From the IMG/VR virus record IMGVR_UViG_3300032296_003307, positions 124,001 to 188,000 of that record: a stretch of 64,000 bases of DNA, one strand, 5' to 3'. This document shows positions 3,660 through 63,865 of this stretch, piece after piece. The stretch's first letter is position 1; every line of letters starts with the position of its first letter. The notes under the pieces are model-generated. The model did not search any database. It was not told the origin of the DNA and was given only the letters and a program-made list of their open reading frames with translations. The translations under genes were made by a program, and so were the position numbers.

Positions 3660-4001
3660 ATGAACTTTAGAGAAGAAACAAATAGAATAAAAGAATTAAT
3701 TTGTGAAACCTCGGATTTGAAATTCAAACGAAGAAACGCAGACGTTGAAAGATTCTTAAGGCAAGTCATGGAATATCTTTCAGTTTGTGATTACGAAGAT
3801 AAAGTACAATTTTTTATTGCTGTTTTATTGTCGGTAAGAGAAGACGAACTGATAAGTAGCAATGAATCTTTTGACGGAAAAGAAGTCTCAGACTTTATTG
3901 AAGACCACTACAAAGAAGAAATATATTACTATTATGAATATTACTATGATTTGGAGTGTGGAAAAAAAGAAATAACCGAATATCCCAATTTTGTTTACTA
4001 A
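3660..4001 (+). CDS. Leader-bearing small helical protein (KRR..C paralog family)
   Basis: MNFREETNRIKELICE...KFKRR...CDY; TATTTATA upstream. Confidence 0.75.
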   Translation: MNFREETNRIKELICETSDLKFKRRNADVERFLRQVMEYLSVCDYEDKVQFFIAVLLSVREDELISSNESFDGKEVSDFIEDHYKEEIYYYYEYYYDLECGKKEITEYPNFVY

Positions 4002-4025
4002 TTTATTTTAGTTATATTTGTGAAC

Positions 4026-4244
4026 ATGAATACTAATGTAATAACTAATCATATGGATACTTATTTTTGGGTTGACAAAGTAATTAACTCATGTACTACA
4101 AAAAAACAAGCCAAAACAGGTATAAAGTTGGTTGGGTTATGGCAAAACATGTTTATAAATCAGTTAGATAGGGAAGAACTAATATACCTTTCAACAAAGT
4201 TAAACAAACGTGCTCTTGAAAAGTATTATTCATTGAATATCTAA
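4026..4244 (+). CDS. Hypothetical protein
   Basis: ATG 5 nt after a TATATTTG promoter box. Confidence 0.7.
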   Translation: MNTNVITNHMDTYFWVDKVINSCTTKKQAKTGIKLVGLWQNMFINQLDREELIYLSTKLNKRALEKYYSLNI

Positions 4245-4270
4245 TTGTGTTTTTGGACTATTTATTTATA

Positions 4271-4600
4271 ATGTCCAAAAAAGAACTCAAAAAAACCATA
4301 TTAAGAATATTGTCAGAAGAAACTTCTGAGGACTTGCCTTTAAAATTAAAAAGAAGGTACTCTAATTTAGTGGATGAATATGAACATACTCTTTCTTTCC
4401 ACAGAATGTGCGAATATGAGGATATTTCGGGTTTTATATCAAATTTGGTATCAGAAATTCAATTTTTAAGCACAAAGAATATACATGAAATTTCTAAACT
4501 TATTTTTTCATATTATACTCAAAATCCATCAAAAACCAAAAAAATGTTGAAACAAGCATTTATAGAAACATGGAATCAACGATGTAAAAAATCAAACTAA
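4271..4600 (+). CDS. Leader-bearing small helical protein (KRR..C family)
   Basis: MSKKELKKTILRILSEE...LKRR...CEY. Confidence 0.75.
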   Translation: MSKKELKKTILRILSEETSEDLPLKLKRRYSNLVDEYEHTLSFHRMCEYEDISGFISNLVSEIQFLSTKNIHEISKLIFSYYTQNPSKTKKMLKQAFIETWNQRCKKSN

Positions 4601-4601
4601 C

Positions 4602-5546
4602 ATGGAGGACTACTCAGTAAAATTTATAAGAAGGGTAAAAGATTTTGAAGAGTTTATTATGGATACTTGGCCTGTAAGAAATCCATGCGACTATGATGAT
4701 ATTGGTCAATACATAAGGGCGATTTACCAAGAGATTGCTGAAATAATTGATGAAGGTGAATTGGATGGAATTTATGTCAGTGAGTGGTTGGATTATGAAG
4801 AAGGAAAAAAATATGTGGATGAAGTTTTAAAGTCAAAAATAGTTGAAAATTATTATTGGAATTGTGGGGATGACGACATGATTACAGAAAACGTAAATTC
4901 AGAAGATGTGATAAATAAATTAGTTGATAAACTGTATGACTATACAATTGGAACCAAACAAGTAAAAAATAATCCAAGAATGTTTACCACATCGATTTAT
5001 TTCACAAACAAAAATGATAAACACCCTGAGATTGAACCAATATATTTCACATGGGAACTTGATAGTGTATGGTCTCCAAAAAAGCTTTCTTTTAGTGAAT
5101 CTAATAATGGTAAAGTTGGTATGTTTAAAAAATTAGGGGCTGAAAACCAATTTTATGAGTGGGCTCGTGAAAAGGCAAAAAAACACGCCGAAAAACACTT
5201 ATTGAATATAGGGGTTTACTTATCAGAGTCAAAGAACCTCAGAAGAAGAGTATATTTTAAAGACTTAGAAGATAGGTTTGAATATAACCTTCAAAGAGCG
5301 GTAACTTTATACAATAAAAAAGTGGATTGGAAAAGTTTTACACGTGAAAAATTTGAACTTATAGTCCTTACTACATTGATAGATGCAATCCATGAAAAAA
5401 TAGATTGGGTCACCGACCCATCGGGAAAATTGTATGACGAAATATACGATTTTTTAAAAGAAACTTTTGGTGGACAGATTGATAAAAAATTTGATGAAAT
5501 AAGGTTGAATAGAATAACCCAAGACATAAAAAACAAAATATATTAA
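4602..5546 (+). CDS. Multi-module hypothetical protein
   Basis: 314 aa; RR..CDY module, with internal ITE and LSE junction-like motifs. Confidence 0.75.
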   Translation: MEDYSVKFIRRVKDFEEFIMDTWPVRNPCDYDDIGQYIRAIYQEIAEIIDEGELDGIYVSEWLDYEEGKKYVDEVLKSKIVENYYWNCGDDDMITENVNSEDVINKLVDKLYDYTIGTKQVKNNPRMFTTSIYFTNKNDKHPEIEPIYFTWELDSVWSPKKLSFSESNNGKVGMFKKLGAENQFYEWAREKAKKHAEKHLLNIGVYLSESKNLRRRVYFKDLEDRFEYNLQRAVTLYNKKVDWKSFTREKFELIVLTTLIDAIHEKIDWVTDPSGKLYDEIYDFLKETFGGQIDKKFDEIRLNRITQDIKNKIY

Positions 5547-7240: not shown

Positions 7241-7275
7241 ATAGAATAAATATAATAGGTTTTTATTTTACAAAG

Positions 7276-7282
7276 TATTTAT
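7276..7282 (+). promoter_or_regulatory. TATTTAT box (representative of the class upstream of leader and structural genes)
   Basis: Also at 17414, 34627, 39339, 53786 and many more, typically 4-12 nt before the start codon, on both strands. Confidence 0.7.
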
Positions 7283-8033: not shown

Positions 8034-8606
8034 ATGAAAATAATAATCACAGAATCACAATACAAATCATTATTGTCTGAACAAACATCAACAAGTGATG
8101 GATGTAAAGTTTGGGTAGAATCAAAAAACGACCCAAAATACATAAAATATATAAACGCACTAAATTTGTACATGAGAGGAAAATCTATTGTTGACTTCTT
8201 TAGGTCAAATCCTGATGCCACAAATGATATTTTAAATAAAAAAGAAGATGAGTTGGTAAAAAAATACCCTGTAAATAATAGATACTTGGGTTTTGGCTCA
8301 GATAGGATATTATCAATAAATTCAATTATGGTTGGTAAGGGTCGTGCCGCACGATATGCACAACAATATCCAAAACCTGATAAAGTTTGCGTAAGACCAA
8401 CTCCTACGACAACTACAACCACTACCATCGCACCACCACCAAACACAAATGCGTCAATTCAAAAGGCAAACAGTTTATTCCAAAGGTACAATTACATGTC
8501 AACTGAAGACAAAAAAAGAGCGGTGGCGAAATACGGTGACCCAAGCAAAGTGCCATTCCAAGGGGTTGATGTTTTATTATTAAGAAAAGAATATCCAAAT
8601 ATATAA
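8034..8606 (+). CDS. Leader-bearing hypothetical protein
   Basis: MKIIITESQYKSLLSEQ; short PTPTTTTT linker. Confidence 0.75.
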   Translation: MKIIITESQYKSLLSEQTSTSDGCKVWVESKNDPKYIKYINALNLYMRGKSIVDFFRSNPDATNDILNKKEDELVKKYPVNNRYLGFGSDRILSINSIMVGKGRAARYAQQYPKPDKVCVRPTPTTTTTTTIAPPPNTNASIQKANSLFQRYNYMSTEDKKRAVAKYGDPSKVPFQGVDVLLLRKEYPNI

Positions 8607-8615
8607 AAACATGTG

Positions 8616-9134: not shown

Positions 9135-9135
9135 A

Positions 9136-12557: not shown

Positions 12558-12668
12558 ATTAGATATAAATATAAGGGGTAGGGGGTTTGGGGATGGTAAT
12601 TAGTTAGATTAGTAGGTAATTTAAAAAATTAATTTTTATTTTTGATTTAAAAATTATATCTTTGTATT

Positions 12669-15767: not shown

Positions 15768-16215
15768 ACCACAAAGGTACTGAATAACTTTGACACTACC
15801 AAATTATTTTCTTCCCCCTATTATTGGGGCGAGCCGCCTCTGATTAAGCTTCAGTGAACGAGTCGTCCCCAGCCCTTGGTCCTCTATCCGATTTCCCACA
15901 ATACAAAGATAGTGAATAGGTATGGAATAAACTAATCCCCCATCCTAAGAGTTATCCACATCGACATGTTTATAAGTGGGGGGTCCATAAGTTATCCACA
16001 AAGGGGTGGGGGTAAAATGTGGATAAGTCCCCCCATACACCCCCCCCGTTATATGGGGGTGGGGGTCCCCCCTGTGACACCCTGTCAGGTATCCCCCCCC
16101 TCTCCCCCCGTCATTTTGTCAGTTTAGGGGGGTCAATACCTTCGATGAAATTTCTGGAAAAATTTTTGGGAAATTCGGTTTATATTTTAATTTAAATTTA
16201 TTAACATAAGGTGAC

Positions 16216-17325: not shown

Positions 17326-17425
17326 TTCCTAATTCCCCTTCGGTAATATATTCTCTTATATGGTGGGGGTTCGGTATAATTATTCCTGAACGGTAAATTC
17401 CCAATGGTCGGGGTATTTATATATT

Positions 17426-17920
17426 ATGAAAAAGGTTGTAAGATTAACCGAGTCTGATTTACTTAGGGTTGTTAAAAGGGTTCTTAAAGAAGAATATACT
17501 CCTGAGAAAGAAAGTGAGTATTACAAATTAACCCTTCAAAGAGATTTCATTAAATCCCAATTAGATTCTTTAAGTAAGAGATATGAAGAAATATCTGAAA
17601 GATTAAATAAAATAGAATTACTTTACCATCCAAAATTAATAATAAGTTTTGTAAAGGGTAAACGAGGAGAAAAAGGGGATAGATACTCGGGTAGAATTAT
17701 GATTCCAAACAAATACAGGATGAATCCTAAAAGTGAAAACGAAAGATTCTACTCTATAGTTTCATCACCAAAAAACGCTTCTGAATATACAGGCAAGGAT
17801 GACCCCAAATTAATTAAAGATTTAACAAATGAATTTAGAAAAAAATTCTCAAACCCCAAGTGGTTAGATTTGTTAAACTTCAACCCTGATGATATATTGT
17901 TTGATAAAAATATAAATTAA
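17426..17920 (+). CDS. Leader-bearing hypothetical protein
   Basis: MKKVVRLTESDLLRVVKRVLKEE. Confidence 0.8.
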   Translation: MKKVVRLTESDLLRVVKRVLKEEYTPEKESEYYKLTLQRDFIKSQLDSLSKRYEEISERLNKIELLYHPKLIISFVKGKRGEKGDRYSGRIMIPNKYRMNPKSENERFYSIVSSPKNASEYTGKDDPKLIKDLTNEFRKKFSNPKWLDLLNFNPDDILFDKNIN

Positions 17921-17927
17921 ATAATTT

Positions 17928-17958
17928 AAACCCCATCCTTCAACAGGTGGGGTTTTTT
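17928..17958 (+). terminator. Intrinsic terminator
   Basis: AAACCCCA/TGGGGTTT stem followed by a T tract. Confidence 0.75.
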
Positions 17959-18104
17959 GTTTTTCCCAAAAAAACTTTTCAATCTGAAATATACCCCATT
18001 TTCAAAAAAAAATTTCCGGAAAAATTTTCAGAAAATTGACTATCTTTGTTCCTTGGGAAAATAAATTTAATCCTTCTTAATGGTTGGGGGAGTATTTATT
18101 GTTT

Positions 18105-18491
18105 ATGAAAAAGGTTGTTATTCTCACAGAATCCGAATTGGTAAATTTAATTGAAAAAATTATTGAAGATAAAAACACTTCCGTAATTGAGGAAGGTTGG
18201 TTTGGTGACATGATTGAGGATATACAATATAATCTTAAATTTTATCTTGGAATTGGTCTTTTATTGTCCTATGGTGTTTTTTCGGGAATTAAGATTTATG
18301 AAAAATCACAGGAACTATCAGGTGAGGAATATTATATGAAGATTTTAAAACCCGCACTTAAACTTCAGGGAAAGAAAAAACTATCTGAATTATCTGATGA
18401 GGTTGGGGAAAAAGATATTTTAATGTATATTCAGCAAAACCCCGATGAGTTTGCCATTGGTGAGAATGGGGAGATTTTCTACAAGGACTAA
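18105..18491 (+). CDS. Leader-bearing protein with one hydrophobic segment
   Basis: MKKVVILTESELVNLIEKIIED; FYLGIGLLLSYGVFSGI. Confidence 0.8.
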   Translation: MKKVVILTESELVNLIEKIIEDKNTSVIEEGWFGDMIEDIQYNLKFYLGIGLLLSYGVFSGIKIYEKSQELSGEEYYMKILKPALKLQGKKKLSELSDEVGEKDILMYIQQNPDEFAIGENGEIFYKD

Positions 18492-18569
18492 TCTTTTTGT
18501 TTCTGATGCCGGAAACGGTTCCCGAATCCCCCGACCCCCTTTTTTTATTTTGGTTGATATTTATAATTT

Positions 18570-18833
18570 ATGAAAAGTATAAGTAAAATAAGACATATCC
18601 AAGAATCAAATTTTAAATTGGAAAAAAGAATTTTATCTGAAGAAGACGAAACCCAATCTATGATGGATGTTTCCTCTGATTCAGATTGGTATCAAAAAAG
18701 AAAACAAGATGTGTCAATCGCTCAAAACGACCTATCAACAATTTTATCCATTGCTTACAGATGGTGCAAAGGTAAGGAAAATTTGCCTGACTGTCAGAAT
18801 GTTAATTCATTGTATATGAAACATTATCTATAA
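18570..18833 (+). CDS. Leader-bearing hypothetical protein
   Basis: MKSISKIRHIQESNFKLEKRILSEE. Confidence 0.75.
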   Translation: MKSISKIRHIQESNFKLEKRILSEEDETQSMMDVSSDSDWYQKRKQDVSIAQNDLSTILSIAYRWCKGKENLPDCQNVNSLYMKHYL

Positions 18834-18849
18834 TAAATTTTTATATCGT

Positions 18850-19374
18850 ATGAAAAAGATTGTAAGATTAAATGAATCCGATTTGATTCGTATTGTTAAA
18901 AGGGTTCTTAAAGAAAATTTGGAATCAAGACCAAATATGATTAGAGTTAGATTAACCCCCGAATTGGAAGAAACAATGATGGAAAGAAATAAGATGGGGG
19001 GAATAGATTTTAATACTGAAATGGATTTAATTTCTGGTATGTGGTACAAAATCGGTCAGGGTCGAGGTAATTTTCACTCTCAAAATTATGAACCCCAATC
19101 GTTTTTCTTTTCAAAATATAAACCAAATCAAAATGAAATTTATACCATGGAAGTTAGATGTCAAGGTAGAGTTCATACCGACATGGCTAAACAGTTAACT
19201 CTTATGTTTGATGAAAGGTTTAATAATTTTCTTAGTAGTGAAAATCCGTACGATAGGTGCTATGATGCGGGTGGATTTTACTCAAAGTTTGAAACTAGAG
19301 ATGGAAAACCAAATTTTGATGTTGGTGAACAAGACCATAGAGGCTATTTTGAAATAACCAAAACTAGCGATTAA
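18850..19374 (+). CDS. Leader-bearing hypothetical protein
   Basis: MKKIVRLNESDLIRIVKRVLKE. Confidence 0.8.
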   Translation: MKKIVRLNESDLIRIVKRVLKENLESRPNMIRVRLTPELEETMMERNKMGGIDFNTEMDLISGMWYKIGQGRGNFHSQNYEPQSFFFSKYKPNQNEIYTMEVRCQGRVHTDMAKQLTLMFDERFNNFLSSENPYDRCYDAGGFYSKFETRDGKPNFDVGEQDHRGYFEITKTSD

Positions 19375-19390
19375 TTGATATTTATATTAT

Positions 19391-19729
19391 ATGAAAAAGA
19401 TTGTTAAACTTAAAGAAGCTGACTTATATAACATTGTTCGTAAAACAATAAACGAAATGGATGGTAATAAGGGTGACTCAATGGATGATTTTTTTAAACA
19501 ATTGAATGATGTTTTGGAGATATACCAAAAAATTGATGATTTGAAAGTAAATCATCTCGATGGTTCTGATTCCGCTGAAAATTATTTAAAATTAAACATA
19601 ATGTATTCCGATATTTTATATAAACTACAAGAAAAAATTTTTCCTAATCGTTTAAAAGTTTTTAATGAGTTGGGTGATAAAGTTAATTATTACGGCAACT
19701 TGTACAATAAGAAAAAAGACGAAATGTAA
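19391..19729 (+). CDS. Leader-bearing hypothetical protein
   Basis: MKKIVKLKEADLYNIVRKTINE. Confidence 0.8.
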   Translation: MKKIVKLKEADLYNIVRKTINEMDGNKGDSMDDFFKQLNDVLEIYQKIDDLKVNHLDGSDSAENYLKLNIMYSDILYKLQEKIFPNRLKVFNELGDKVNYYGNLYNKKKDEM

Positions 19730-19739
19730 TACACTTGAT

Positions 19740-19768
19740 AACCCCCTTCTTTAAGTTGGGGGTTTTTT
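19740..19768 (+). terminator. Intrinsic terminator (near-identical to 22517)
   Basis: AACCCCC-ttctttaagtt-GGGGGTT followed by a T tract. Confidence 0.75.
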
Positions 19769-19789
19769 ATTTCCGCATATTTATTCTAT

Positions 19790-20143
19790 ATGAAAATTAT
19801 TATTGCTGAGAGTCAATTAAAAAAATTTATTGAAGATAAATTGGGTCTTGACCTTGGTGATAAAATTCACATGATAACAAGTAAGTATGACTTGCCAAGA
19901 GAATTTCATTATGCCTTTGCTGGAGATGCCAGATTTTTTAATCAATCTCTAAATTACTTTGGACCAATGTATATGATTGAAACTCCTGACGGAAAATTTT
20001 TATATCACAATAGAAACGGAAAAATAAGAATTTATGATGAAAACGATACTCAAAATTTATCACCAAGAGATGTTTTTCGGTCACTTGGGATTAGTCCGTA
20101 TTGGGGTTTTGATATTGATGATTTGATTAACATTTATTTTTGA
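19790..20143 (+). CDS. Leader-bearing hypothetical protein
   Basis: MKIIIAESQLKKFIED. Confidence 0.8.
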   Translation: MKIIIAESQLKKFIEDKLGLDLGDKIHMITSKYDLPREFHYAFAGDARFFNQSLNYFGPMYMIETPDGKFLYHNRNGKIRIYDENDTQNLSPRDVFRSLGISPYWGFDIDDLINIYF

Positions 20144-20203
20144 CACCGGAAACCGTTTTAAATTCCCCCAACCCCCTTTTTTATTTGATTATATTTATTG
20201 ATA

Positions 20204-20563
20204 ATGTACTTAAGGGGTCTAATTAAAAAAGTTATTAACGAGGAACTAAAAATACCTACCGATTTTGGACCTGTTTATTGGAAGGTACCAAAACATATTC
20301 GGGATGATATTGGTGTAAGACTTGCCAAAGAAGAAGATGTCTTATATTTGCAGGAAATTCATTTTGATACATCTGTGGTTTTATTGATGCCTTATGCCAA
20401 AGATGAAACCGGTGAAGAATATGCTTATTCGGATTTGAATCCGCATTGGCATTTGTATCCAACAGAGTATCGTATTCCATTTAAAAAAATCCCACCAAGT
20501 TTGATGAATTTTATTAGACGTAGACTACCATCCGAATATTTTGAATATATGAACTTTTCTTGA
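20204..20563 (+). CDS. Leader-bearing hypothetical protein
   Basis: MYLRGLIKKVINEE. Confidence 0.75.
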   Translation: MYLRGLIKKVINEELKIPTDFGPVYWKVPKHIRDDIGVRLAKEEDVLYLQEIHFDTSVVLLMPYAKDETGEEYAYSDLNPHWHLYPTEYRIPFKKIPPSLMNFIRRRLPSEYFEYMNFS

Positions 20564-20577
20564 GATATTTATTATGT

Positions 20578-21006
20578 ATGAAAAAGATTGTTAAATTAAC
20601 CGAATCTGATTTGCTTAGAATTGTTAAACGAGTTATAAAAGAAGAATATGGAAAATCGTATTCAATTGAATCCTTATACGACGTTATAAAAGATGAATTA
20701 ATAAATGACCAAGCCGTACAAGATTGGATTAAATTCACGGAGTCTATGGGAGCCTTGAATGATTTTATGGTCGATGATGATGGTGTTGGAATTGCTGACC
20801 GTGCTGAATTGGAAGGAGATACTTTGGGTGTTACAGGAAACGTTAGCATTTTGTCCGCAACCATTCTACCCATCTTGGTTAGATTGGGAATCACAAACAA
20901 ATCAAAATTAAAATCAAACCCTGAGGAAATGGATATGGTAAATCATATTGCCAAATTATTATATTCGGACATAAAACCTGACTATAATCCTCATGGTGAT
21001 TTATAA
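20578..21006 (+). CDS. Leader-bearing hypothetical protein
   Basis: MKKIVKLTESDLLRIVKRVIKEE. Confidence 0.8.
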   Translation: MKKIVKLTESDLLRIVKRVIKEEYGKSYSIESLYDVIKDELINDQAVQDWIKFTESMGALNDFMVDDDGVGIADRAELEGDTLGVTGNVSILSATILPILVRLGITNKSKLKSNPEEMDMVNHIAKLLYSDIKPDYNPHGDL

Positions 21007-21028
21007 TTTAAAGTAATATTTATATCAT

Positions 21029-21400
21029 ATGAAAAAGGTTGTTAGATTAACTGAATCAGATTTAATTAGATTGGTTAAAAAAATTATAAAAGAAGAGGAG
21101 GGTGAATCATCAGTTGAATCGATTAAAGATGAAATTGACGGAAAATTTAATACTCACCGTCGTATATTTCTTATGGATTTACAAAATGGTAAAGTAAAAT
21201 CTGATGAAGGTTTAAAAAATTACCATAATAAATTTGATGATAGCATGGCAAATTTTTTCCAAAATTTAAGGAATGAGGGAATATTAACACCTGATAGTAA
21301 TGAATTCCAAGAAGTTTTCCAACATTTTTTTTCAAAAAGCAATCAATTTTATGATTTAATTCAAGATGCTCATAAAAAACATAAAATGCGTAATAATTAA
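21029..21400 (+). CDS. Leader-bearing hypothetical protein
   Basis: MKKVVRLTESDLIRLVKKIIKEE. Confidence 0.8.
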   Translation: MKKVVRLTESDLIRLVKKIIKEEEGESSVESIKDEIDGKFNTHRRIFLMDLQNGKVKSDEGLKNYHNKFDDSMANFFQNLRNEGILTPDSNEFQEVFQHFFSKSNQFYDLIQDAHKKHKMRNN

Positions 21401-21411
21401 TTTTTAAAAAA

Positions 21412-21750
21412 ATGAAAAAGGTAGTTAGATTAACAGAAAGCCAATTAGTAAAATTTGTTAAAAGAGTTTTGGCAGAACAAGGTATGGAACCTGAATTGGA
21501 AAATAAACCCAAAAATAGACCTATTAATTTTGATAAAATCAAAAACAAGTTTGATAAATTCTTGGACGACTTGAGTTCACAAGGTAATGTGGATAAAGGT
21601 AGATTTTTAAAAGATGTTGATAAAGAAATAAGAGCATATTATCATAGCCGTTTAAACGATGATAATTCAAACGTAGGTAATTTTGCGGAAAAACATGCTG
21701 AAGTAATCCAACACTTCAGAGACAGGTTCAACAGCGAAAAAATAAGTTGA
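21412..21750 (+). CDS. Leader-bearing hypothetical protein
   Basis: MKKVVRLTESQLVKFVKRVLAEQ. Confidence 0.8.
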   Translation: MKKVVRLTESQLVKFVKRVLAEQGMEPELENKPKNRPINFDKIKNKFDKFLDDLSSQGNVDKGRFLKDVDKEIRAYYHSRLNDDNSNVGNFAEKHAEVIQHFRDRFNSEKIS

Positions 21751-21762
21751 TATTTATATACT

Positions 21763-22494
21763 ATGAAAAAAATTATCAAATTAACCGAATCAGATTTATT
21801 TAAAATTGTTAAAAAAGTTATTTTAGAATCTACCGATACAATTGGCGGTGAATTAACTTATATAAAGGATATTGAAAACGGGATAAAGGTTTATGGTAAA
21901 AACTATGGTGACTATACAATTTATGTTATGGTCTTCAAAGTTAAAGATAAAGATGGTACTCCACGTATGATAGCTAAAGTACAGGGAACACCTACTGATG
22001 GAAAAGAAAATTATTTTCCTACTGTTGGTTCACCTGAAGATAAAAAAGGTGGTTTTATTTATATTAATGACTTGAATGACCCAATATTAACACAAAAATA
22101 TATTCCGATGGTTCATAATAAGTTTGGTAATCCTCAAACACCAACACCACCAACGCAAGATTCAATTGCCGGAGAATTAAAATTTAAAGAAGAAAAAAAC
22201 GGAATTAAACTTTACTCAAACAAATATAGAGATTATGCAATTAAAGTTCTTGTTAGAAATGTAACAAAAAAAGATGGAACACTAATAACCATAGCCAAGG
22301 TTATGTCAATAATAAACAGACCAATGGTGTCTAATGCCGAAGAGTATAACCCGACTGAAGGGTCATCAGACGATATAGGAAATGGTTATATTGTAATAAA
22401 CGATTTAAATGACCCAAAATTAATGAAATATATTTCAATGGTTCGCAAACAAGTGGAACTTTATAGAAAATGGGATGATTTACCAAAACTATAA
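21763..22494 (+). CDS. Leader-bearing protein with internally duplicated ~100-aa domain
   Basis: MKKIIKLTESDLFKIVKKVILES; two copies of GEL...NGIK.Y...Y.DY.I.V...KKDGT...IAKV...INDLNDP.L. Confidence 0.8.
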   Translation: MKKIIKLTESDLFKIVKKVILESTDTIGGELTYIKDIENGIKVYGKNYGDYTIYVMVFKVKDKDGTPRMIAKVQGTPTDGKENYFPTVGSPEDKKGGFIYINDLNDPILTQKYIPMVHNKFGNPQTPTPPTQDSIAGELKFKEEKNGIKLYSNKYRDYAIKVLVRNVTKKDGTLITIAKVMSIINRPMVSNAEEYNPTEGSSDDIGNGYIVINDLNDPKLMKYISMVRKQVELYRKWDDLPKL

Positions 22495-22516
22495 TCAAAA
22501 ACCAATGTTAGTTTAT

Positions 22517-22545
22517 AACCCCCTACTTTAAGTTGGGGGTTTTTT
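22517..22545 (+). terminator. Intrinsic terminator
   Basis: AACCCCC-tactttaagtt-GGGGGT followed by a T tract. Confidence 0.75.
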
Positions 22546-22568
22546 ATTTTTATGGGTATTTATTTTAT

Positions 22569-23171: not shown

Positions 23172-23196
23172 TAATTTTTAGTTATATTTGTAGAAC

Positions 23197-23502
23197 GTGA
23201 AAATTATGCCAACCGAATCAAAATATAACGAATATAAAATAATTAGGAGATACGATTCCTTTTTTGATTATTTAAAAGAATTTTTAGAAGGTAAGGAAAA
23301 TAACATCAAGGGAGGTTTTTATACCAGTGTAGGTCATTTTATAAATCACACAGTAAAATATATGACCATGGATTTAATTGATTTTGCGATAGAAAATAAA
23401 ATAGATTCATTATTTTTCATGGAAACCTTGGAAAAAATGTTTGGCAATTACTTGAAAAGTTATTGGGAAAAGAACGGAAAGTTAAATACTAATATTTATT
23501 GA
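23197..23502 (+). CDS. Small helical protein (IRR family), degenerate leader
   Basis: GTG start, KIMPTESKY...IIRR; TATATTTG box upstream. Confidence 0.65.
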   Translation: MKIMPTESKYNEYKIIRRYDSFFDYLKEFLEGKENNIKGGFYTSVGHFINHTVKYMTMDLIDFAIENKIDSLFFMETLEKMFGNYLKSYWEKNGKLNTNIY

Positions 23503-24761: not shown

Positions 24762-24782
24762 AAACAAATATATTTATTAATT

Positions 24783-25568: not shown

Positions 25569-25586
25569 TTTTATATTTATTGGGAT

Positions 25587-27052: not shown

Positions 27053-27117
27053 ATCGTTTTTTATTTAATGATATTACATATTTTTTGAATTGTCACGTTA
27101 TTGGATATTTATAGTTT

Positions 27118-29497: not shown

Positions 29498-29547
29498 TTT
29501 TTTATTTTGGTAATTTTTAATATATTTGCATAATAAATTTAATTATT

Positions 29548-29965: not shown

Positions 29966-29996
29966 GGTTTTTTTTTACCGTATATTTATATTGTGT

Positions 29997-31002: not shown

Positions 31003-31010
31003 TACCTTTG
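31003..31010 (+). promoter_or_regulatory. Bacteroidota-type -7 promoter (TAnnTTTG) with TTG 19 nt upstream (representative)
   Basis: Also at 4013, 12657, 29521, 50016, 51994 and 52623 on +, and upstream of 15767, 50975 and 62484 on -. Confidence 0.8.
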
Positions 31011-31664: not shown

Positions 31665-31685
31665 TCAACATACTATTTATAGTTT

Positions 31686-32682: not shown

Positions 32683-32722
32683 AAGATATAAATATCAAAA
32701 TAAAACTATTTATCAATAAATC

Positions 32723-33550: not shown

Positions 33551-33577
33551 TAGATTTACTTGGTATATTTATAACAT

Positions 33578-34606: not shown

Positions 34607-34639
34607 AATTTAATCTATAACTTAGGTATTTATAGATAT

Positions 34640-35206
34640 ATGAAGATTATAATCAAAGAATCTCAATTACCACTTTTATTAGAAAACCTTCAATTTGAAG
34701 AGGTGTATAAAAAAACATACCCGAAGATTTTTAATGCGGTATGTATGAGATATGCTAAAGGTGATTATGATTTGGCGTCAGAATATTGTCAATTAGGGTT
34801 TATTCAAGTTTATAAAAATTTAGATAAGTACGATAATTTAGGTAGTTTAGAAGGTTGGGTTAGAAGAGTTGTTACAAATATTATAATTAACGAATTGAGG
34901 TCACAAAAAAGAAAATTGGACACTGTTCCTGATTTTGAAGTGGATTTAGAAAAATTAGACCTTTCGCAAGAACCAGAAAGTTTTGAAGAAATTTCTTACA
35001 TGGGTAAATACCCCGAAAGTTTAATTAGAGCGGCGGTTAATTCTTTACCTGACGGATACAAATATGTTTTCTACAATTATTATTTTGGTGATAAAAGTCA
35101 TAAAGAAATTGCGGATGATTTGGGTATTAAAGAAATTACGTCACGCACCCAATTACACAAAGCCAAAAATTTAATTAAAAACTACTTGGAAAAACATTCA
35201 AAATGA
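34640..35206 (+). CDS. ECF-type sigma-70 factor with N-terminal leader
   Basis: Region 2: FEEVY...A.E..QLGFIQVYKNLDKY...LEGWVRRVVTN..IN.LR. Region 4: LPDGY..VF...SHKEIA..LGI...TSRTQLHKAK. Confidence 0.9.
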   Translation: MKIIIKESQLPLLLENLQFEEVYKKTYPKIFNAVCMRYAKGDYDLASEYCQLGFIQVYKNLDKYDNLGSLEGWVRRVVTNIIINELRSQKRKLDTVPDFEVDLEKLDLSQEPESFEEISYMGKYPESLIRAAVNSLPDGYKYVFYNYYFGDKSHKEIADDLGIKEITSRTQLHKAKNLIKNYLEKHSK

Positions 35207-36276: not shown

Positions 36277-36328
36277 TTGATTATAAATAGTAGTGTGGTA
36301 ATTTACATGTAATGTATATTTATAAACA

Positions 36329-36730: not shown

Positions 36731-36795
36731 AATTTTCTTCTAAAATAATATCATTAGAACAATTTTTTTATTGTTTTTCCTATATTTATCAGGGT

Positions 36796-38186: not shown

Positions 38187-38204
38187 GACAGTATTTATAT
38201 AAAT

Positions 38205-38534
38205 ATGAAAAACAGGACAATTATTCTCAGAGAATCCGAACTTGTCAATGTTATTGAAAGGTTAGTTAAGGAAGAAGACATGATGGAATTCATGGACTAT
38301 GACGACGCCGACCCAATTGAGGTTATGAGAATTAACAAGGAAAATTTGAAAAGTAAGAAGTTGACATTTTATGAATATGAAATCAACGATGCCGGTTATT
38401 TAATTTTATTTGATGAGATTAGAAATGTGTCGATAGAAGTTTATGATGGTGAATTTGTTGATAGTGATAATTTCGAAATTATCTATAAACCAATGAATCA
38501 ATATGCTAAAGAAGTATTTTCAGAGATAATATGA
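38205..38534 (+). CDS. Leader-bearing acidic protein
   Basis: MKNRTIILRESELVNVIERLVKEE. Confidence 0.75.
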   Translation: MKNRTIILRESELVNVIERLVKEEDMMEFMDYDDADPIEVMRINKENLKSKKLTFYEYEINDAGYLILFDEIRNVSIEVYDGEFVDSDNFEIIYKPMNQYAKEVFSEII

Positions 38535-39323: not shown

Positions 39324-39352
39324 ATTTCTATTTGCTTGTATTTATTATCAGT

Positions 39353-46359: not shown

Positions 46360-46407
46360 TCTAAAATTGATAATTGATTTACATATTATGATGATATTTA
46401 TTGAGGT

Positions 46408-49655: not shown

Positions 49656-49704
49656 AACAGATAAATATCACCAAATCACATAAAAAGTTTTTTAGATAAT
49701 ATTT

Positions 49705-50004
49705 ATGGGTATGATAGGTAACATTAAAAAGTTCTCATTTGCTGAGATGACATCAAATAACAACGGAAAAACATCCGTTACATCAACCTCAGGTGCTTAT
49801 ATAATTTTTATAGGTGGTTTAGGTTTTATTGCTGGTTGTGTGGATAAAATGTTTTTGGGAAACACAGTTGATATTATAAATCAATCTATAATGTTGGTTA
49901 CAATTGGTGCCGGTTTACTTGGTGTTAAAAATATCACTGGTAGTAGAAATCAAATGGCTGAAGCCAAAGCTGAACAAATTAAATCTGAAATTGAGCAAAA
50001 TTAA
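49705..50004 (+). CDS. Two-TM holin-like protein
   Basis: Two hydrophobic helices and a charged C-terminus, near the endolysin. Confidence 0.5.
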   Translation: MGMIGNIKKFSFAEMTSNNNGKTSVTSTSGAYIIFIGGLGFIAGCVDKMFLGNTVDIINQSIMLVTIGAGLLGVKNITGSRNQMAEAKAEQIKSEIEQN

Positions 50005-50027
50005 AATTTTTGCCGTATATTTGTAGT

Positions 50028-50975: not shown

Positions 50976-51004
50976 AATACAAAGATAATAAAATAAACTC
51001 TCAT

Positions 51005-51949: not shown

Positions 51950-52007
51950 AACTTTTTTTCTTATAAATATTTGTTATAACTTGTAATTCTTATTATCTTT
52001 GTAATTG

Positions 52008-52612: not shown

Positions 52613-52634
52613 AAAAAATCATTATCTTTGTAAC

Positions 52635-53772: not shown

Positions 53773-53798
53773 ATTTATAACCGAGTATTTATGTTTAT

Positions 53799-54923: not shown

Positions 54924-54945
54924 AATATCCAAGTATTTATAAAAT

Positions 54946-57032: not shown

Positions 57033-57061
57033 ACCGATAAATACTACCAACCATACTATAA

Positions 57062-58334: not shown

Positions 58335-58349
58335 AACACATTGGATTTG

Positions 58350-58437
58350 CGGAAGCTGAGGGATTCGAACCCCCGGACCCCGTTAAGGGTCTTCAGTTTT
58401 CAAGACTGACGCGATAGACCAACTCTGCCAAACTTCC
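58350..58437 (-). tRNA. tRNA-Ser(TGA)
   Basis: GGAAGTT/AGCTTCC acceptor stem, TCAGT-CTTGAAA-ACTGA anticodon arm, long variable arm, GGTTCGAAT, G discriminator. Confidence 0.92.
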
Positions 58438-58877: not shown

Positions 58878-58946
58878 AATACAATTATATAACCAATCAT
58901 GATTATATCAAACTAATTTTTAATAATTGCTGATATTTATTTTATT

Positions 58947-60356: not shown

Positions 60357-60386
60357 CATTTATAAATATCATAGTATTTATTAAAT

Positions 60387-61683: not shown

Positions 61684-61694
61684 AGTGAAAGTAT

Positions 61695-61727
61695 AAAAAA
61701 GAAAAAGGTCGGAATCAACCGACCTTT
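61695..61727 (-). terminator. Intrinsic terminator
   Basis: AAAGGTCGG/CCGACCTTT, same stem as at 51014. Confidence 0.65.
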
Positions 61728-61731
61728 CTTT

Positions 61732-62484
61732 CTAATTACCCCAAAGTTTTTCAACAACAAACTTAAATCTCTTTTGGTTCACATATTCTTTTACCTGAGA
61801 TTTAGGAAGCCAAAATTCAAATTCACCAACTTCTTCAATTCTTCTTTTAAGGTCTGCCTTAAATCGAGAAACTTCGTTGGCGTTCTTGATGTAAGTGATA
61901 CCCATGTTTTTAGCACAAATGGCTCCCATGCCTGTTAAAATTGAAAACTCATCTGTCAAAGTTGCTCCACAACAACGACAAACATCACCATTTTCTTCTG
62001 TCATTTTAACAGTTACTTTAACCGCCTTTTCAGTGATTTGGGTAGCTTTAATCATATCAACCAAGATTGGCATGAACTCCAAACCATACTCTTTTTTTAG
62101 TTTCAGAGCGACACCACGTTTTATTTTGATGGACTCATTGTTTAAGGGTATGTTGATTTTTTGTGCGGGTGCTTTGTTTTCTTTTGCGATTTGTTTAACC
62201 GCTGAGATTATTTGTTTATCAGACAAACGTCTCCAAGTTTTGTATTGTTCTTTAATTTTGAGAACAAATTCGTTGGGTCCTTGATAATTCACGATTGATT
62301 TCAGGTCGTCAGAAAGTTCGTCAACGTTAATATCGTTAACCTTTTCTTCTTGGATAAGAATTTTTTCTGCAATTTCAAACTGTTTTGAGGTCAAGCGACC
62401 GTATTTGTGTAATCCGGGTTGGATGTTACGAATGAAAGAATTGTTTCCGTTGTACTCTCTTACTTTTTGTTCTACTGTTTTCAT
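61732..62484 (-). CDS. Zn-finger (DUF6011-like) protein
   Basis: CRCCGATLTD..SI..GMGAICA; TATCTTTG promoter upstream. Confidence 0.7.
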   Translation of the reverse strand: MKTVEQKVREYNGNNSFIRNIQPGLHKYGRLTSKQFEIAEKILIQEEKVNDINVDELSDDLKSIVNYQGPNEFVLKIKEQYKTWRRLSDKQIISAVKQIAKENKAPAQKINIPLNNESIKIKRGVALKLKKEYGLEFMPILVDMIKATQITEKAVKVTVKMTEENGDVCRCCGATLTDEFSILTGMGAICAKNMGITYIKNANEVSRFKADLKRRIEEVGEFEFWLPKSQVKEYVNQKRFKFVVEKLWGN

Positions 62485-62554
62485 GGTGGTTGTTTTTAAC
62501 AATACAAAGATACGCGCTTTTTTCGATTGCACAACTATTTATAAAGAAAAAATT

Positions 62555-63865
62555 ATGAACGCATATTTTTTCAATATGACTCCTGAAGAAAGAGAGTCAA
62601 TCTTAGACAAACATAAACATGTTTACAACGGTTATCAAACTTTGCAAGCAAATATCCCAAATCCCCAACCATTATATGTTCAGGATTATGCTAACGACAA
62701 AGAAGGGATAACAGTGTCCAACAAAGGTAAGGTAATGTCATACAGAAACCAAAACATAAATGAAAGTATTCAAGAAGGTAATATGTGTGAGCAGTGTGGT
62801 AGTATGATGAACGAAGGTGAAACGTGTGAACAATGTGAAAGCAGATATGAAAGTATAAAAGAAGGTGAAATGTGTGAACAATGTGGAGGCACAATGTCTG
62901 AAGGTAAATGTAAAGTGTGTAGTAAATACAAAAAATACGACGTTGATATATATGATGTTGAAGATTTAAATCCAAAAAACAAATTTGATTATGTTGAAGG
63001 TATGGAAACTTCAGAGTTAGATGAAATAAGAATTGGAGATTTAGAACTTGACAAACCATACAGTATGAAATTTACGAAATTTGACGAACCAGATTTTCCA
63101 AAATACGACAAAAAAATGAAGTACACAGGTAAAATACAATATAAAGACGGAAAACCTATGCATGGATTCTCATCAATTGAGGACGAACCAAGTTGGGCAA
63201 GTTTTACAGGAGATGATGACGAAGAATTAAGAGATGTATACCCTATTGATTTAGAAGAAATGGAATCAAATTATGACTATAAATTACCTGCATACCAATT
63301 CAAATCACATGGACCAATAGACGCTTACGATGAAAGCGATAAGAATTATTTTGAGGATTCTGTTGATGTGTTTGATGATGAAGATTTACAGGCGGGAAGA
63401 GCTTTTTCAGACATGGGAGACAAAAGTGATTGGTCGGATGAAAAAATATTAATGAGTTTAAGAAGTGATTCTGATAAATCTATGGGAACCGATACATCGA
63501 TAGATATGGATTTAAGTGACGTTAAAGAACCATATACTTTTGCATCAGGAGGTCCCGGTAGAAGTATTGGTGTATATGAAGAATTGGAAGAGGAATCTTC
63601 GGCAAAAATAGGTCCATACGCGAACAAATCTTTAAAAGAACTTCAAAATGAGTTGGCTAAATTAAACGCCAAAGCAGACGAACACAAAGAAAAAGATGAA
63701 AACTTACCTGTAGATATTAAAATGAAACTAAATCAAGTACGTAACGCAATTCAGGCTAAAAGAAAATCAAAAGTTGAAGAAGATGTTAATGAAGATTTAC
63801 GAGAGTCGTTCATCAAACAAAAAAATAAAATAACAGAAATGTTTAACAGAATACAAAAATACTAA
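62555..63865 (+). CDS. Leader-bearing acidic protein with tandem CEQCG Zn-ribbon repeats
   Basis: Start reassigned after TATTTATA: MNAYFFNMTPEERESILDKH; EG..CEQCG repeats; many (I/L)xE sites. Confidence 0.75.
   Translation: MNAYFFNMTPEERESILDKHKHVYNGYQTLQANIPNPQPLYVQDYANDKEGITVSNKGKVMSYRNQNINESIQEGNMCEQCGSMMNEGETCEQCESRYESIKEGEMCEQCGGTMSEGKCKVCSKYKKYDVDIYDVEDLNPKNKFDYVEGMETSELDEIRIGDLELDKPYSMKFTKFDEPDFPKYDKKMKYTGKIQYKDGKPMHGFSSIEDEPSWASFTGDDDEELRDVYPIDLEEMESNYDYKLPAYQFKSHGPIDAYDESDKNYFEDSVDVFDDEDLQAGRAFSDMGDKSDWSDEKILMSLRSDSDKSMGTDTSIDMDLSDVKEPYTFASGGPGRSIGVYEELEEESSAKIGPYANKSLKELQNELAKLNAKADEHKEKDENLPVDIKMKLNQVRNAIQAKRKSKVEEDVNEDLRESFIKQKNKITEMFNRIQKY

What the first reader, a model, noticed from the sequence alone, without database searches (positions are those of the whole stretch)
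3660..62555. Two promoter classes split the genes: TATTTAT before tagged and structural genes, host-type TAnnTTTG before untagged genes
Seen: TATTTAT(A) lies about 4-12 nt upstream of most leader genes and of the fibre, LamG and endolysin genes, on both strands; some mid-operon leader genes lack their own box. Most untagged small or metabolic genes (4026, 12669, 15767, 29548, 31015, 50028, 50975, 52008, 52635, 62484) instead have TAnnTTTG, several with TTG 19-20 nt upstream. One exception is 23197, which has a degenerate leader and a host-type box. Established: TAnnTTTG is the Bacteroidota housekeeping -7 element. Inference: TATTTAT is a phage late promoter giving near-leaderless mRNAs. It is the reverse complement of the T4 late TATAAATA but is used in the opposite orientation. 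A late assignment independently supports the leader proteins being virion cargo.
Basis: partly seen in the sequence, partly recalled or inferred. Interest (0 to 1): 0.6.

Follow-up and report, generated by a model that had tools for sequence, protein, structure and literature searches.

The report
Two leaderless promoter classes in a flavophage
This freshwater phage of Flavobacterium-type hosts marks its virion, lysis and tagged-protein genes with an invariant TATTTAT box and its replication and repair genes with the host's own promoter type. Both boxes usually sit so close to the ATG that the mRNAs should have no leader.

Summary
In the window, 40 of about 105 genes have TATTTAT within 40 nt upstream (2.3 expected), and 32 of these lie exactly 4-7 nt before the start. 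The motif is R-TATTTAT-W, invariant, with no -35 element. It is the top upstream word in 80 related phage loci, in two complete relatives (174 kb and 321 kb) and beside late genes of a cultured Flavobacterium phage. There it precedes terminase, portal, protease, sheath, tube and lysin genes at variable distances, so it behaves as a promoter and not as a ribosome signal.

It drives polymerase, primase, clamp loader, RecA-like, RNA ligase and methylase genes. Both boxes begin at -12 from the ATG, where the flavobacterial sigma-A box sits relative to the transcription start, so both classes look leaderless.

A conserved, very diverged gp55-like sigma, encoded outside the window, is the best candidate reader of TATTTAT. 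No RNA data exist, so timing and start sites remain inferred. The 268-kb record is probably a chimera of two related phages. This is a new variant of the T4-type late promoter.

The parts
3648..3654 (+). Class A box TATTTAT, 5 nt before ATG 3660 (113-aa ORF). It faces the box at 3611-3617(-), which lies 9 nt before ATG 3601.
4259..4265 (+). Class A box, 5 nt before ATG 4271
7246..7252 (-). Class A box, 5 nt before ATG 7240(-) (tagged, MKILITESQ). One half of a divergent pair in a 46-nt intergenic region.
7276..7282 (+). Class A box, 4 nt before ATG 7287. It heads a run of tagged MNLQE... genes (8034-11746) that have no box of their own.
12565..12571 (-). Class A box, 7 nt before ATG 12557(-)
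17414..22563 (+). Array of ten class A boxes, each exactly 5 nt before the ATG of a tagged gene. Boxes start at 17414, 18093, 18558, 19379, 19778, 20192, 20566, 21017, 21751 and 22557. Gene starts are 17426, 18105, 18570, 19391, 19790, 20204, 20578, 21029, 21763 and 22569. Several boxes directly follow a hairpin plus T-run.
23493..23499 (+). Class A box, 12 nt before ATG 23512
24771..24777 (+). Class A box, 5 nt before ATG 24783
25574..25580 (+). Class A box, 6 nt before ATG 25587 (tagged)
27106..27112 (+). Class A box, 5 nt before GTG 27118. This is the only non-ATG start in the class. The start is fixed by its paralogue at 20204.
29983..29989 (+). Class A box after a terminator, 7 nt before ATG 29997 (GH108 muramidase domain)
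31674..31680 (+). Class A box, 5 nt before ATG 31686 (tagged)
32688..32713 (.). Divergent pair of class A boxes in a 40-nt intergenic region. 32688-32694(-) lies 5 nt before ATG 32682. 32707-32713(+) lies 9 nt before ATG 32723.
33566..33572 (+). Class A box, 5 nt before ATG 33578
34627..35206 (+). Class A box (34627-34633), 6 nt before ATG 34640. The gene encodes an ECF-type sigma factor (188 aa) that also carries the N-terminal tag MKIIIKESQL.
36283..36323 (.). Divergent pair. 36283-36289(-) lies 6 nt before ATG 36276 (LamG/Laminin_G_3 protein). 36317-36323(+) lies 5 nt before ATG 36329.
36783..36789 (+). Class A box, 6 nt before ATG 36796 (tagged)
38192..38205 (.). Two overlapping class A boxes in an 18-nt divergent intergenic region. 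38192-38198(+) lies 6 nt before ATG 38205. 38199-38205(-) lies 12 nt before ATG 38186.
39339..39345 (+). Class A box after a terminator, 7 nt before ATG 39353 (1281-aa fibre-like protein)
46395..46401 (+). Class A box, 6 nt before ATG 46408 (481 aa, paralogue of the 43209 gene)
49661..49706 (.). Divergent pair. 49661-49667(-) lies 5 nt before ATG 49655. 49700-49706(+) lies 4 nt before the second ATG at 49711.
51963..51969 (-). Class A box, 13 nt before ATG 51949(-), the endolysin (PG_binding_1 + Glyco_hydro_19)
53786..53792 (+). Class A box after a terminator, 6 nt before ATG 53799 (tagged polyphosphate kinase 2)
54934..54940 (+). Class A box, 5 nt before ATG 54946
57037..57043 (-). Class A box, 4 nt before ATG 57032(-) (Endonuclease_NS with a signal-peptide-like N-terminus)
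58934..58940 (+). Class A box, 6 nt before ATG 58947 (tagged)
60362..60381 (.). Divergent pair in a 27-nt intergenic region. 60362-60368(-) lies 5 nt before the second ATG at 60356 (MKIVITEEQ tag). 60375-60381(+) lies 5 nt before ATG 60387.
62536..62542 (+). Class A box, 12 nt before ATG 62555
4013..4020 (+). Host-type box TATATTTG, 5 nt before ATG 4026, with TTG 19 nt upstream
12657..12664 (+). Host-type box TATCTTTG, 4 nt before ATG 12669. No TTG at 19-20 nt.
15772..15779 (-). Host-type box TACCTTTG, 4 nt before ATG 15767(-), with TTG 20 nt upstream
23183..23190 (+). Host-type box, 6 nt before GTG 23197 or 15 nt before ATG 23206
29521..29528 (+). Host-type box, 19 nt before ATG 29548
31003..31010 (+). 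Host-type box TACCTTTG, 4 nt before ATG 31015, with TTG 19 nt upstream
50016..50023 (+). Host-type box TATATTTG, 4 nt before ATG 50028
50980..50987 (-). Host-type box TATCTTTG, 4 nt before ATG 50975(-) (metallophosphoesterase)
51994..52001 (+). Host-type box, 6 nt before ATG 52008, with TTG 20 nt upstream. It shares a 58-nt intergenic region with the endolysin's class A box.
52623..52630 (+). Host-type box TATCTTTG, 4 nt before ATG 52635 (RNA ligase), with TTG 19 nt upstream
62505..62512 (-). Host-type box TATCTTTG, 20 nt before ATG 62484(-), with TTG 19 nt upstream

Best explanation
R-TATTTAT-W is the promoter of the phage's late transcription class. It is a single -10-region element with no -35 element, read by host core RNA polymerase carrying a phage-encoded, highly diverged gp55-like sigma. 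That sigma is the g357 family, at G000 245426-246169(-), outside the window. In the tagged-gene arrays the box ends 5 nt before the ATG, so its TA sits at -12/-11 if transcription starts on the A of ATG, and the mRNAs are leaderless. Before classical virion genes the same box sits 8-35 nt upstream and gives short leaders.

The second class is the ordinary Bacteroidota sigma-A promoter, TTG-N19/20-TAnnTT(TG). It drives replication, repair, modification and other pre-late genes, often in the same leaderless register.

Shown in silico: the motif, its geometry, its orientation, its conservation and its gene-class association. Inferred: the timing, the transcription start sites and which sigma reads the box.
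For: Position and invariance:
- 55 sites lie at gap 4-7, against 0-6 for control words.
- One-mismatch variants show no excess.
- The weight matrix shows only R-TATTTAT-W and nothing upstream.

Promoter rather than ribosome signal:
- The same box lies 8-35 nt before portal, sheath, tube, hub, TerL and endolysin genes, often as TATTTATAACAAA.
- 10 of 103 class A genes and 5 of 47 host-type genes lie within 40 nt of a hairpin plus T-run, against 4 of 234 other genes and 0.9% of random positions.
- 40 of the 50 first genes of divergent pairs carry a box, in intergenic regions as short as 18-49 nt.

Conservation:
- TATTTAT is the top upstream 7-mer, about 20-fold enriched, in 80 relatives' loci at 56-97% capsid-protein identity.
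- 31 of 207 genes carry it in a complete 174-kb relative and 103 of 367 in a complete 321-kb relative, against 2.4 and 6.3 expected.
- In Flavobacterium phage immuto, 10 of 10 plus-strand sites near the capsid module are intergenic (9 in annotated gaps, the tenth inside a 31-aa hypothetical ORF).

Function split:
- Class A precedes TerL, portal, S77 protease, adaptor, sheath, tube and lysin genes in G005.
- The host-type box precedes primase, RecA-like, 5'-3' exonuclease, QueC, GTP cyclohydrolase I, DNA polymerase B, clamp loader, RNA ligase, methylase and phosphatase genes.
- In the window, tagged genes favour class A (odds ratio 3.4, p=0.005) and avoid host-type boxes (odds ratio 0.1, p=0.016).

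Geometry:
- The F. psychrophilum sigma-A box lies at -12..-5 from mapped transcription starts (PMC9723704).
- 54 of 55 gap 4-7 genes start with ATG.

Sigma:
- g357 weakly matches phrog_234, the T4 late sigma family (E=0.0016).
- Its only meaningful PDB sequence hit is T4 gp55 (E=0.06, collinear).
- Its model has a sigma region-2 fold (Z=10.4, rmsd 2.2 A over 91 residues, all top 50 hits sigma factors).
- It has more than 7900 homologues and is present in four of the five relatives searched, all four from the capsid-1 lineage, and in the 321-kb jumbo relative G005.
- No RNA polymerase beta gene was found, with a valid positive control.
Against: - No transcript data of any kind exist. No RNA run holds the sequence.
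- The gp55 assignment rests on weak sequence scores (hhalign probability 2-3%). A region-2 fold says sigma, not gp55 specifically.
- No gp45-type clamp was detected by phrog_223, so T4-style clamp coupling is unsupported.
- Some class A genes are not obviously late, for example the ECF sigma, PPK2 and nuclease genes.
- Promoters of divergent genes could in principle lie inside the neighbouring coding region.
- The record is probably chimeric, so statements about the whole genome mix two phages.
Confidence: 0.7

Rival explanations
1. TATTTAT is a weak variant of the host sigma-A -7 box, read by the unmodified host holoenzyme. It would not define a separate temporal class.
For: The box shares register and four positions with TAnnTTTG: T-12, A-11, T-8 and T-6. 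F. psychrophilum shows several sigma-A motif variants.
Against: It lacks the TTG at -33: only 12 of 233 sites have one. It has A in place of the conserved T at the sixth position and no G at -5. It is invariant, unlike the degenerate host-type class. It segregates by gene function. A conserved extra sigma is encoded.
Confidence: 0.12
2. TATTTAT acts on the RNA. It would be a translation enhancer or an operator for a phage RNA-binding protein (RegA-like) placed at a fixed distance from the AUG.
For: The spacing to the ATG is fixed at 5 nt at 33 sites. Bacteroidota lack Shine-Dalgarno sequences.
Against: The distance varies from 8 to 35 nt before virion genes here and in relatives. The box directly follows terminators, with no room for another promoter. 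It occurs in both orientations in 18-49-nt divergent gaps. Many well-conserved mid-operon genes lack it.
Confidence: 0.08
3. The window's own ECF-type sigma (34640-35206) is the factor that reads TATTTAT.
For: It is a bona fide sigma: Sigma70_r2 at 42.5 bits and r4_2 at 42.8 bits. It sits among the class A genes.
Against: It is absent from five relatives and from G005, which all use TATTTAT. It carries a region 4, yet the promoter has no -35 element. It is itself behind a TATTTAT box, so it could not start the class.
Confidence: 0.05
4. The pattern is an artefact of AT-rich background, or of duplicated paralogues carrying their 5' flanks along.
For: The genome is 32% GC. Many of the downstream genes are paralogues with similar N-termini.
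Against: Control words of similar composition show no peak. Flanks on both sides of the box are unconserved. The box also precedes unrelated genes and is conserved across lineages whose capsid proteins are 56% identical or less.
Confidence: 0.02

Closest known systems
Bacteriophage T4 late promoters (TATAAATA at -13..-6; gp55 sigma, gp33 co-activator, gp45 sliding clamp)
   Same: Both are a single short, tightly conserved AT-rich -10-region element with no -35 element. Both occur on both strands before virion and lysis genes, at roughly 50-100 sites per genome. The phage belongs to the T4 superfamily (gp23-type capsid protein, gp20-type portal, S77 protease) and encodes a gp55-like protein with a sigma region-2 fold.
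   Different: The sequence is TATTTAT(W), not TATAAATA. The register is shifted by one (TA at -12/-11). About half of the sites are placed to give leaderless mRNAs. The sigma is barely recognisable as gp55 and is longer (247 against 185 aa). No gp45-type clamp was detected.
Bacteroidota sigma-A promoters (-33 TTTG / -7 TAnnTTTG; box at -12..-5 in Flavobacterium psychrophilum)
   Same: The host-type class here has the same boxes and the same 19-20-nt spacing. The spacing is specific: 17 sites at -12 against 0-1 for other spacings.
   Different: Many sites keep only TAnnTT. About 23 sites put the box exactly at -12/-13 from the ATG and so look leaderless, whereas only 5.5% of host mRNAs are leaderless.
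Leaderless phage transcripts (lambda cI from PRM; Thermus phage middle and late genes; cited from my own knowledge)
   Same: The promoter -10 element is placed so that transcription starts on the A of the AUG. The start codon is almost always ATG.
   Different: Here this applies to dozens of genes in one array, in a phage of a phylum where leaderless mRNAs are rare. It applies to both promoter classes.
T4 capsid-targeting sequence and internal proteins (IPII, IPIII, Alt) cleaved by the gp21 protease
   Same: Short conserved N-terminal tags sit on many otherwise unrelated proteins. The tags contain (L/I)xE-type sites. An S77 (gp21-type) protease is encoded. The tagged genes carry the late-type promoter.
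   Different: There are about 50 tagged genes in the window, against a handful in T4. The tag consensus differs. Neither packaging nor cleavage has been shown.

Membership tests
T4-type (gp55-dependent) late promoter | A single conserved AT-rich element of about 8 bp in the -10 region, with no -35 element | tested here: met
   The weight matrix of 55 sites shows only R-TATTTAT-W informative. TTG lies at 19-20 nt in only 12 of 233 sites.
T4-type (gp55-dependent) late promoter | Consensus TATAAATA on the non-template strand | tested here: not met
   The consensus is TATTTAT(W). TATAAAT shows no positional peak before genes.
T4-type (gp55-dependent) late promoter | Lies before virion and lysis genes, on either strand | tested here: met
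   It precedes portal, sheath, tube, hub, TerL, S77 protease, adaptor, fibre and endolysin genes here and in G005.
T4-type (gp55-dependent) late promoter | The phage encodes a gp55 homologue | tested here: inconclusive
   phrog_234 E=0.0016. The top PDB sequence hit is gp55 7d7c_F, E=0.06. hhalign probability is only 2-3%. The sigma region-2 fold scores Z=10.4.
T4-type (gp55-dependent) late promoter | Activation through a gp45 sliding clamp and gp33 | tested here: not met
   phrog_223 finds nothing in the record. gp33 was not searched. The part of the record that holds the window is incomplete, so absence is weak evidence.
T4-type (gp55-dependent) late promoter | Late timing, dependent on phage protein synthesis and replication | not testable with these tools
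   No RNA run holds the sequence.
Bacteroidota sigma-A promoter | A -7 box TAnnTTTG | tested here: met
   The window has 12 gene-proximal boxes. The whole record has 8 genes at gap exactly 4, against 0.35 expected.
Bacteroidota sigma-A promoter | A -33 TTG/TTTG about 19-20 nt upstream of the TA | tested here: met
TTG-N19/20-TAnnTT occurs 17 times at -12, against 1 and 0 for N16/17 and N22/23.
Bacteroidota sigma-A promoter | The host is a member of Bacteroidota | tested here: inconclusive
   The nearest cultured relative infects Flavobacterium sp. (capsid protein 53% identical). The host of this phage itself is unknown.
Leaderless mRNA | The transcription start coincides with the A of the start codon | not testable with these tools
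   Only geometry is available: the box starts at -12 from the ATG, which equals the sigma-A box position relative to mapped starts in F. psychrophilum.
Leaderless mRNA | The start codon is AUG | tested here: met
   54 of 55 gap 4-7 genes start with ATG and one with GTG.
ECF (group 4) sigma factor (window 34640-35206) | Sigma regions 2 and 4 only | tested here: met
   Sigma70_r2 scores 42.5 bits and Sigma70_r4_2 scores 42.8 bits, both above cut-off. phrog_1740 E=1e-21.

The most novel reading that the evidence does not exclude
A large, globally common clade of freshwater T4-superfamily phages of Flavobacteriia uses a previously undescribed late-promoter code, R-TATTTAT-W, read by a gp55-like sigma too diverged for family models to detect. 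In the jumbo lineage this code produces dozens of leaderless mRNAs for capsid-targeted cargo proteins. One of these is an ECF sigma factor that would be packaged and injected to reprogramme host RNA polymerase at the very start of infection.
Probability: 0.12. Interest if true: 0.8.

Novelty: new variant of a known kind. Interest (0 to 1): 0.55.

Why it matters
Promoters of phages that infect Bacteroidota are almost unmapped. Here one 7-mer predicts the late regulon in hundreds of uncultured genomes and in a cultured Flavobacterium phage, which makes the prediction directly testable. It assigns a function to an abundant hypothetical protein family with more than 7900 members. It also points to unusually heavy use of leaderless mRNAs in a phylum that lacks Shine-Dalgarno initiation and where only about 5% of host mRNAs are leaderless. 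Finally, it gives a simple way to sort unannotated genes of these phages into pre-late and late classes, including the large family of N-terminally tagged proteins.

Tried and rejected
- DNA search of the fibre region against annotated phages found no match.
- No RNA run holds the sequence, so no transcription-start or timing test was possible.
No relatives were found in viral contigs, in five related genomes or in G005, so it was rejected as the clade-wide factor.
- phrog_12791, a second late-sigma family, gave no hit.
- phrog_223, the gp45 clamp family, gave no hit.
- The search for T7-type RNA polymerase (PF00940) found nothing, but it had no positive control and is uninformative.
- RNA polymerase beta (PF00562) is absent, with valid controls.
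- The composite TTG-N17-21-TAnnTTTG is not enriched genome-wide (68 sites against 46-67 in simulations). Only its position before genes is significant.
- GCTTGG, enriched at -50..-26, turned out to be a recurrent terminator hairpin and not a promoter element.
- My first strict terminator finder was too stringent and was replaced by a folding-based one.
- Laying contigs across the suspected chimeric junction did not decide the question.
- Rfam found nothing in the ORF-poor stretch 13.9-16.4 kb.
- Foldseek alone gave no significant match for the g357 model. The re-alignment gave the sigma region-2 result.

Full report
**Context.** The window is bases 124001-188000 of a 268,739-bp IMG/VR virus record with 32% GC. 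The record encodes T4-type terminase, portal, major capsid, tail sheath and tail tube proteins. Its nearest cultured relative by capsid protein is Flavobacterium phage vB_FspM_immuto (53% identity), followed by Rhodothermus phage RM378. The DNA recurs in freshwater and lake metagenomes from 13 studies, but in no RNA run. I called 384 genes with a simple codon-usage caller that knew nothing about upstream motifs.

**The TATTTAT observation.** TATTTAT occurs 68 times in the window, against 45.5 +/- 6.7 in shuffles. That is a mild excess, and the strong signal is positional.
- In the window, 40 of about 105 genes have the word within 40 nt upstream on the coding strand, against 2.3 expected. 32 of them have it 4-7 nt before the start.
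- Record-wide, 55 sites lie at gap 4-7, and 33 at exactly 5. Seven control words of similar composition give 0-6.
- TATTTATNNNNNATG occurs 38 times, against 5 for the reversed control.
- An unbiased count makes TATTTA and ATTTAT the most enriched 6-mers in -25..-1: 94-96 genes against 9-10 expected.
- Aligned sites show R-TATTTAT-W and nothing else. There is no -35-like element, and the flanks are not conserved.
- One-mismatch variants show no excess at the preferred spacing, so the 7-mer is effectively invariant.
- 54 of the 55 downstream starts are ATG.
- In many cases the start codon is fixed independently by the shared N-terminal tag of paralogues.

**The host-type observation.** TAnnTTTG occurs 132 times against 108 expected, again with a sharp position. 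Eight genes have it exactly 4 nt before the ATG and two have it 5 nt before, against 0.35 expected per position.

Among genes with neither motif, TAnAnT sits at exactly -12 in 24 genes, against 2-7 at neighbouring offsets. Most of these read TAnnTT with TTG(G) 19-20 nt upstream. The composite TTG-N19/20-TAnnTT puts its TA at -12 in 17 genes and at -13 in 6. Spacings of N16/17 and N22/23 give 1 and 0.

**Geometry.** In Flavobacterium psychrophilum the sigma-A box TAnnTTTG lies at -12 to -5 from mapped transcription starts, and only 5.5% of mRNAs are leaderless (PMC9723704). Here TAnnTTTG + 4 nt + ATG and TATTTAT + 5 nt + ATG both put their TA at -12/-11 relative to the A of the ATG. Both classes are therefore placed to give leaderless mRNAs. 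This is an inference from geometry, because no 5' ends are available.

**Promoter or translation signal?** Four observations favour a promoter.
1. Before classical virion genes the same box sits at variable distance. It is 20 nt before the portal gene, 32 before sheath, 24 before tube, 14 before hub, 17 before the second TerL and 13 before the endolysin. It often appears as TATTTATAACAAA, with A-rich sequence where initiation would occur.
2. A hairpin plus T-run lies within 40 nt upstream of 10 of 103 class A genes and 5 of 47 host-type genes. The figures are 4 of 234 for other genes and 0.9% for random positions. So 15 of the 19 genes that follow a terminator carry one of the two boxes, often with no other sequence in between.
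3. Of the 50 genes that head the 25 divergent pairs, 40 carry a box (24 class A). The intergenic regions are as short as 18, 27, 40 and 46 nt and contain little else.
4. Mid-operon genes, including about half of the tagged ones, lack the box.

**Conservation.**
- In 80 loci around capsid genes of relatives (56-97% capsid-protein identity, 1.19 Mb), TATTTAT is the most enriched 7-mer in the 40 nt upstream of ORFs. The enrichment is about 20-fold in every identity band, mostly at 10-20 nt.
- In Flavobacterium phage immuto, all ten plus-strand RTATTTATW sites in the 41-kb capsid-module region are intergenic if a 31-aa hypothetical ORF (gp068) that holds one site is discounted. They lie before the TerL, PhoH, virion protein and tail sheath genes.
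- In a complete 174-kb relative (G004), 31 of 207 genes carry the box, against 2.4 expected.
- In a complete 321-kb jumbo relative with terminal repeats (G005), 103 of 367 genes carry it, against 6.3 expected. 32 of these are at gap 4-7, and 8 genes have TAnnTTTG at gap 4.

**Function split.**
- Class A precedes portal, sheath, tube, hub, fibre-like, LamG and endolysin genes in this record.
- In G005 it precedes TerL, portal, S77 prohead protease, head-tail adaptor, sheath, tube and lysin-like genes.
- Host-type boxes precede primase, RecA-like, 5'-3' exonuclease, QueC, GTP cyclohydrolase I, family B DNA polymerase, clamp loader, HAD phosphatase, ClpB-like, RNA ligase, metallophosphoesterase and DNA methylase genes.
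- In the window, 51 genes match a loose regular expression for the tag. Of these, 25 have their own class A box, 25 are mid-operon and one has a host-type box. Of the 54 untagged genes, 12 have class A and 9 have host-type boxes (odds ratios 3.4 and 0.1; p=0.005 and 0.016).

This pattern fits an early/late split, but the timing itself is unmeasured.

**Who reads TATTTAT?**
- No RNA polymerase beta gene is present in this record or in three jumbo relatives, and the search had valid positive controls. The search for T7-type polymerase had no control and is uninformative. The phage therefore most likely redirects host core polymerase.
- There are two sigma-like genes. The first, window 34640-35206, is a clear ECF-type sigma with regions 2 and 4_2. 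It is absent from all relatives tested, has a region 4 that the promoter does not need, and is itself behind a TATTTAT box.
- The second, g357 (G000 245426-246169, minus strand), is the better candidate:
  - It gives weak hits to the T4 late-sigma family phrog_234 (E=0.0016) and to Sigma70_r2.
  - A family profile finds T4 gp55 as its only meaningful PDB sequence match, collinear over about 150 residues (E=0.06).
  - hhalign against gp55 is not significant.
  - Its AlphaFold model (mean pLDDT 69) has a sigma region-2 fold. The best match is sigma-E at Z=10.4, rmsd 2.2 A over 91 residues, and all top 50 matches are sigma factors.
  - The family has more than 7900 members, all unnamed. It is present in four of the five relatives searched, all four from the capsid-1 lineage, and in the 321-kb jumbo relative G005.
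- No gp45-type clamp was detected, so T4-style clamp coupling is not supported.

**Comparison with T4.** T4 late promoters are TATAAATA at -13..-6. They lack a -35 element, are tightly conserved at about 50 sites, occur on both strands and are read by gp55 (PMC2988020). The present motif shares that architecture and that gene class. It differs in sequence, it is shifted by one position, and it is often placed for leaderless transcripts. The T4-orientation word has no positional peak. I treat the resemblance as superficial.

**The tags.** The N-termini of the tagged proteins fall into a few related consensus types: MKKVVRLTESDL..., MNLQENI.RIKEMMGLL and MKIIITESQLK. They contain (L/I)xE, the site type cut by the T4 gp21 protease according to my own knowledge of T4. 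Two S77 (gp21-type) proteases are encoded in the record. T4 uses an N-terminal capsid-targeting sequence of about 10 aa on its internal proteins (PMC9958956). Tags are conserved in G005 (91% identity over 35 aa; 70-75% over 23-28 aa) while the protein bodies differ. Tagged proteins include PPK2, a GH108 muramidase, a P-loop kinase-like protein, a peptidoglycan-binding protein and the ECF sigma. A late-type promoter is what cargo genes would need, but it is not independent proof of packaging.

**Caveat on the record.**
- The record holds two divergent head modules. The two TerL genes are 27% identical, the two portals 34% and the two S77 proteases 47%, and there are two gp23-type capsid genes.
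- Relatives of either lineage have a single portal.
- Bases 1 to about 112 kb match the 174-kb immuto-like genome G004. Bases from about 116 kb onward match the 321-kb jumbo genome G005.
- The record is therefore probably a chimera of two related phages, and the window lies wholly in the jumbo-lineage part.
- Laying contigs across 112.9-118.8 kb did not decide the matter. Only the probable source run covers it, as short unitigs at an even depth of about 13x, with repeats at 117.7-118.8 kb.
- This does not affect the motif results, which hold in each part separately and in non-chimeric relatives.

**Verdict.** Timing, start sites and the identity of the sigma remain inferences. This is a new variant of the T4-type late promoter, combined with unusually heavy use of leaderless geometry in a phage of Bacteroidota.

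Noticed in passing
G000 25-35 kb and 228-238 kb (outside the window); junction at about G000 112-116.5 kb: The 268.7-kb record has two divergent head modules (TerL, portal, S77 protease, gp23-type capsid protein). Its first 112 kb match a 174-kb immuto-like genome, and the rest matches 270-320-kb jumbo genomes that each have one portal. It is probably a chimeric assembly of two related phages, and CheckV's '100% complete' is misleading.
   Followed up: partly
window 34640-35206 (+): An ECF-type sigma factor carries the same N-terminal tag (MKIIIKESQL) as the putative cargo proteins and sits behind a TATTTAT box. It is absent from all relatives tested. If the tag targets proteins to the capsid, this would be an injected sigma factor.
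   Followed up: partly
window 53799-54923, 29997-30977, 9136-9891; G000 217631-219037: Tagged proteins include enzymes: polyphosphate kinase 2, a GH108 muramidase, a P-loop kinase-like protein and a peptidoglycan-binding protein.
   Followed up: partly
window 6295-38866 and elsewhere; G005 222.7, 223.1 and 235.1 kb: About 50 genes in the window share short N-terminal tags of a few related types, all containing an (L/I)xE-type site. The tags alone are conserved in the 321-kb relative (70-91% identity over 23-35 aa) while the rest of the proteins differ. This points to a modular targeting peptide.
   Followed up: partly
G000 2859, 71577, 82158, 88981 (outside the window): A recurrent terminator hairpin, GCTTGGgaaaCCAAGC plus T-run, has a TTG in its 5' arm that lies exactly 20 nt before the TAyATT box of the next gene (primase, DNA polymerase, clamp loader). 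The terminator and the -33 element overlap.
   Followed up: partly
window 14120-16216: An ORF-poor stretch with higher GC (0.40) holds repeated G5/C5-containing boxes (AAGTGGGGG..., ...CCCCCTAT). Rfam gives no match at E<=0.1. Its function is unknown.
   Followed up: partly
window 58219-58307 and 58349-58437 (-): Two tRNA-Ser genes (anticodons GCT and TGA). The long ORF 57062-58255(-) overlaps the first one, so its true start must lie further downstream.
   Followed up: no
G000 76440-77318 and 80225-80959 (outside the window): QueC and GTP cyclohydrolase I genes sit behind host-type promoters. This suggests 7-deazaguanine DNA modification in the immuto-like part.
   Followed up: no
G000 117.7-118.8 kb (L015 4800-5900): In the source run this stretch has contig depth up to about 9 times that of its flanks, with many alternative joints. 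It is a repeated element close to the suspected junction.
   Followed up: no
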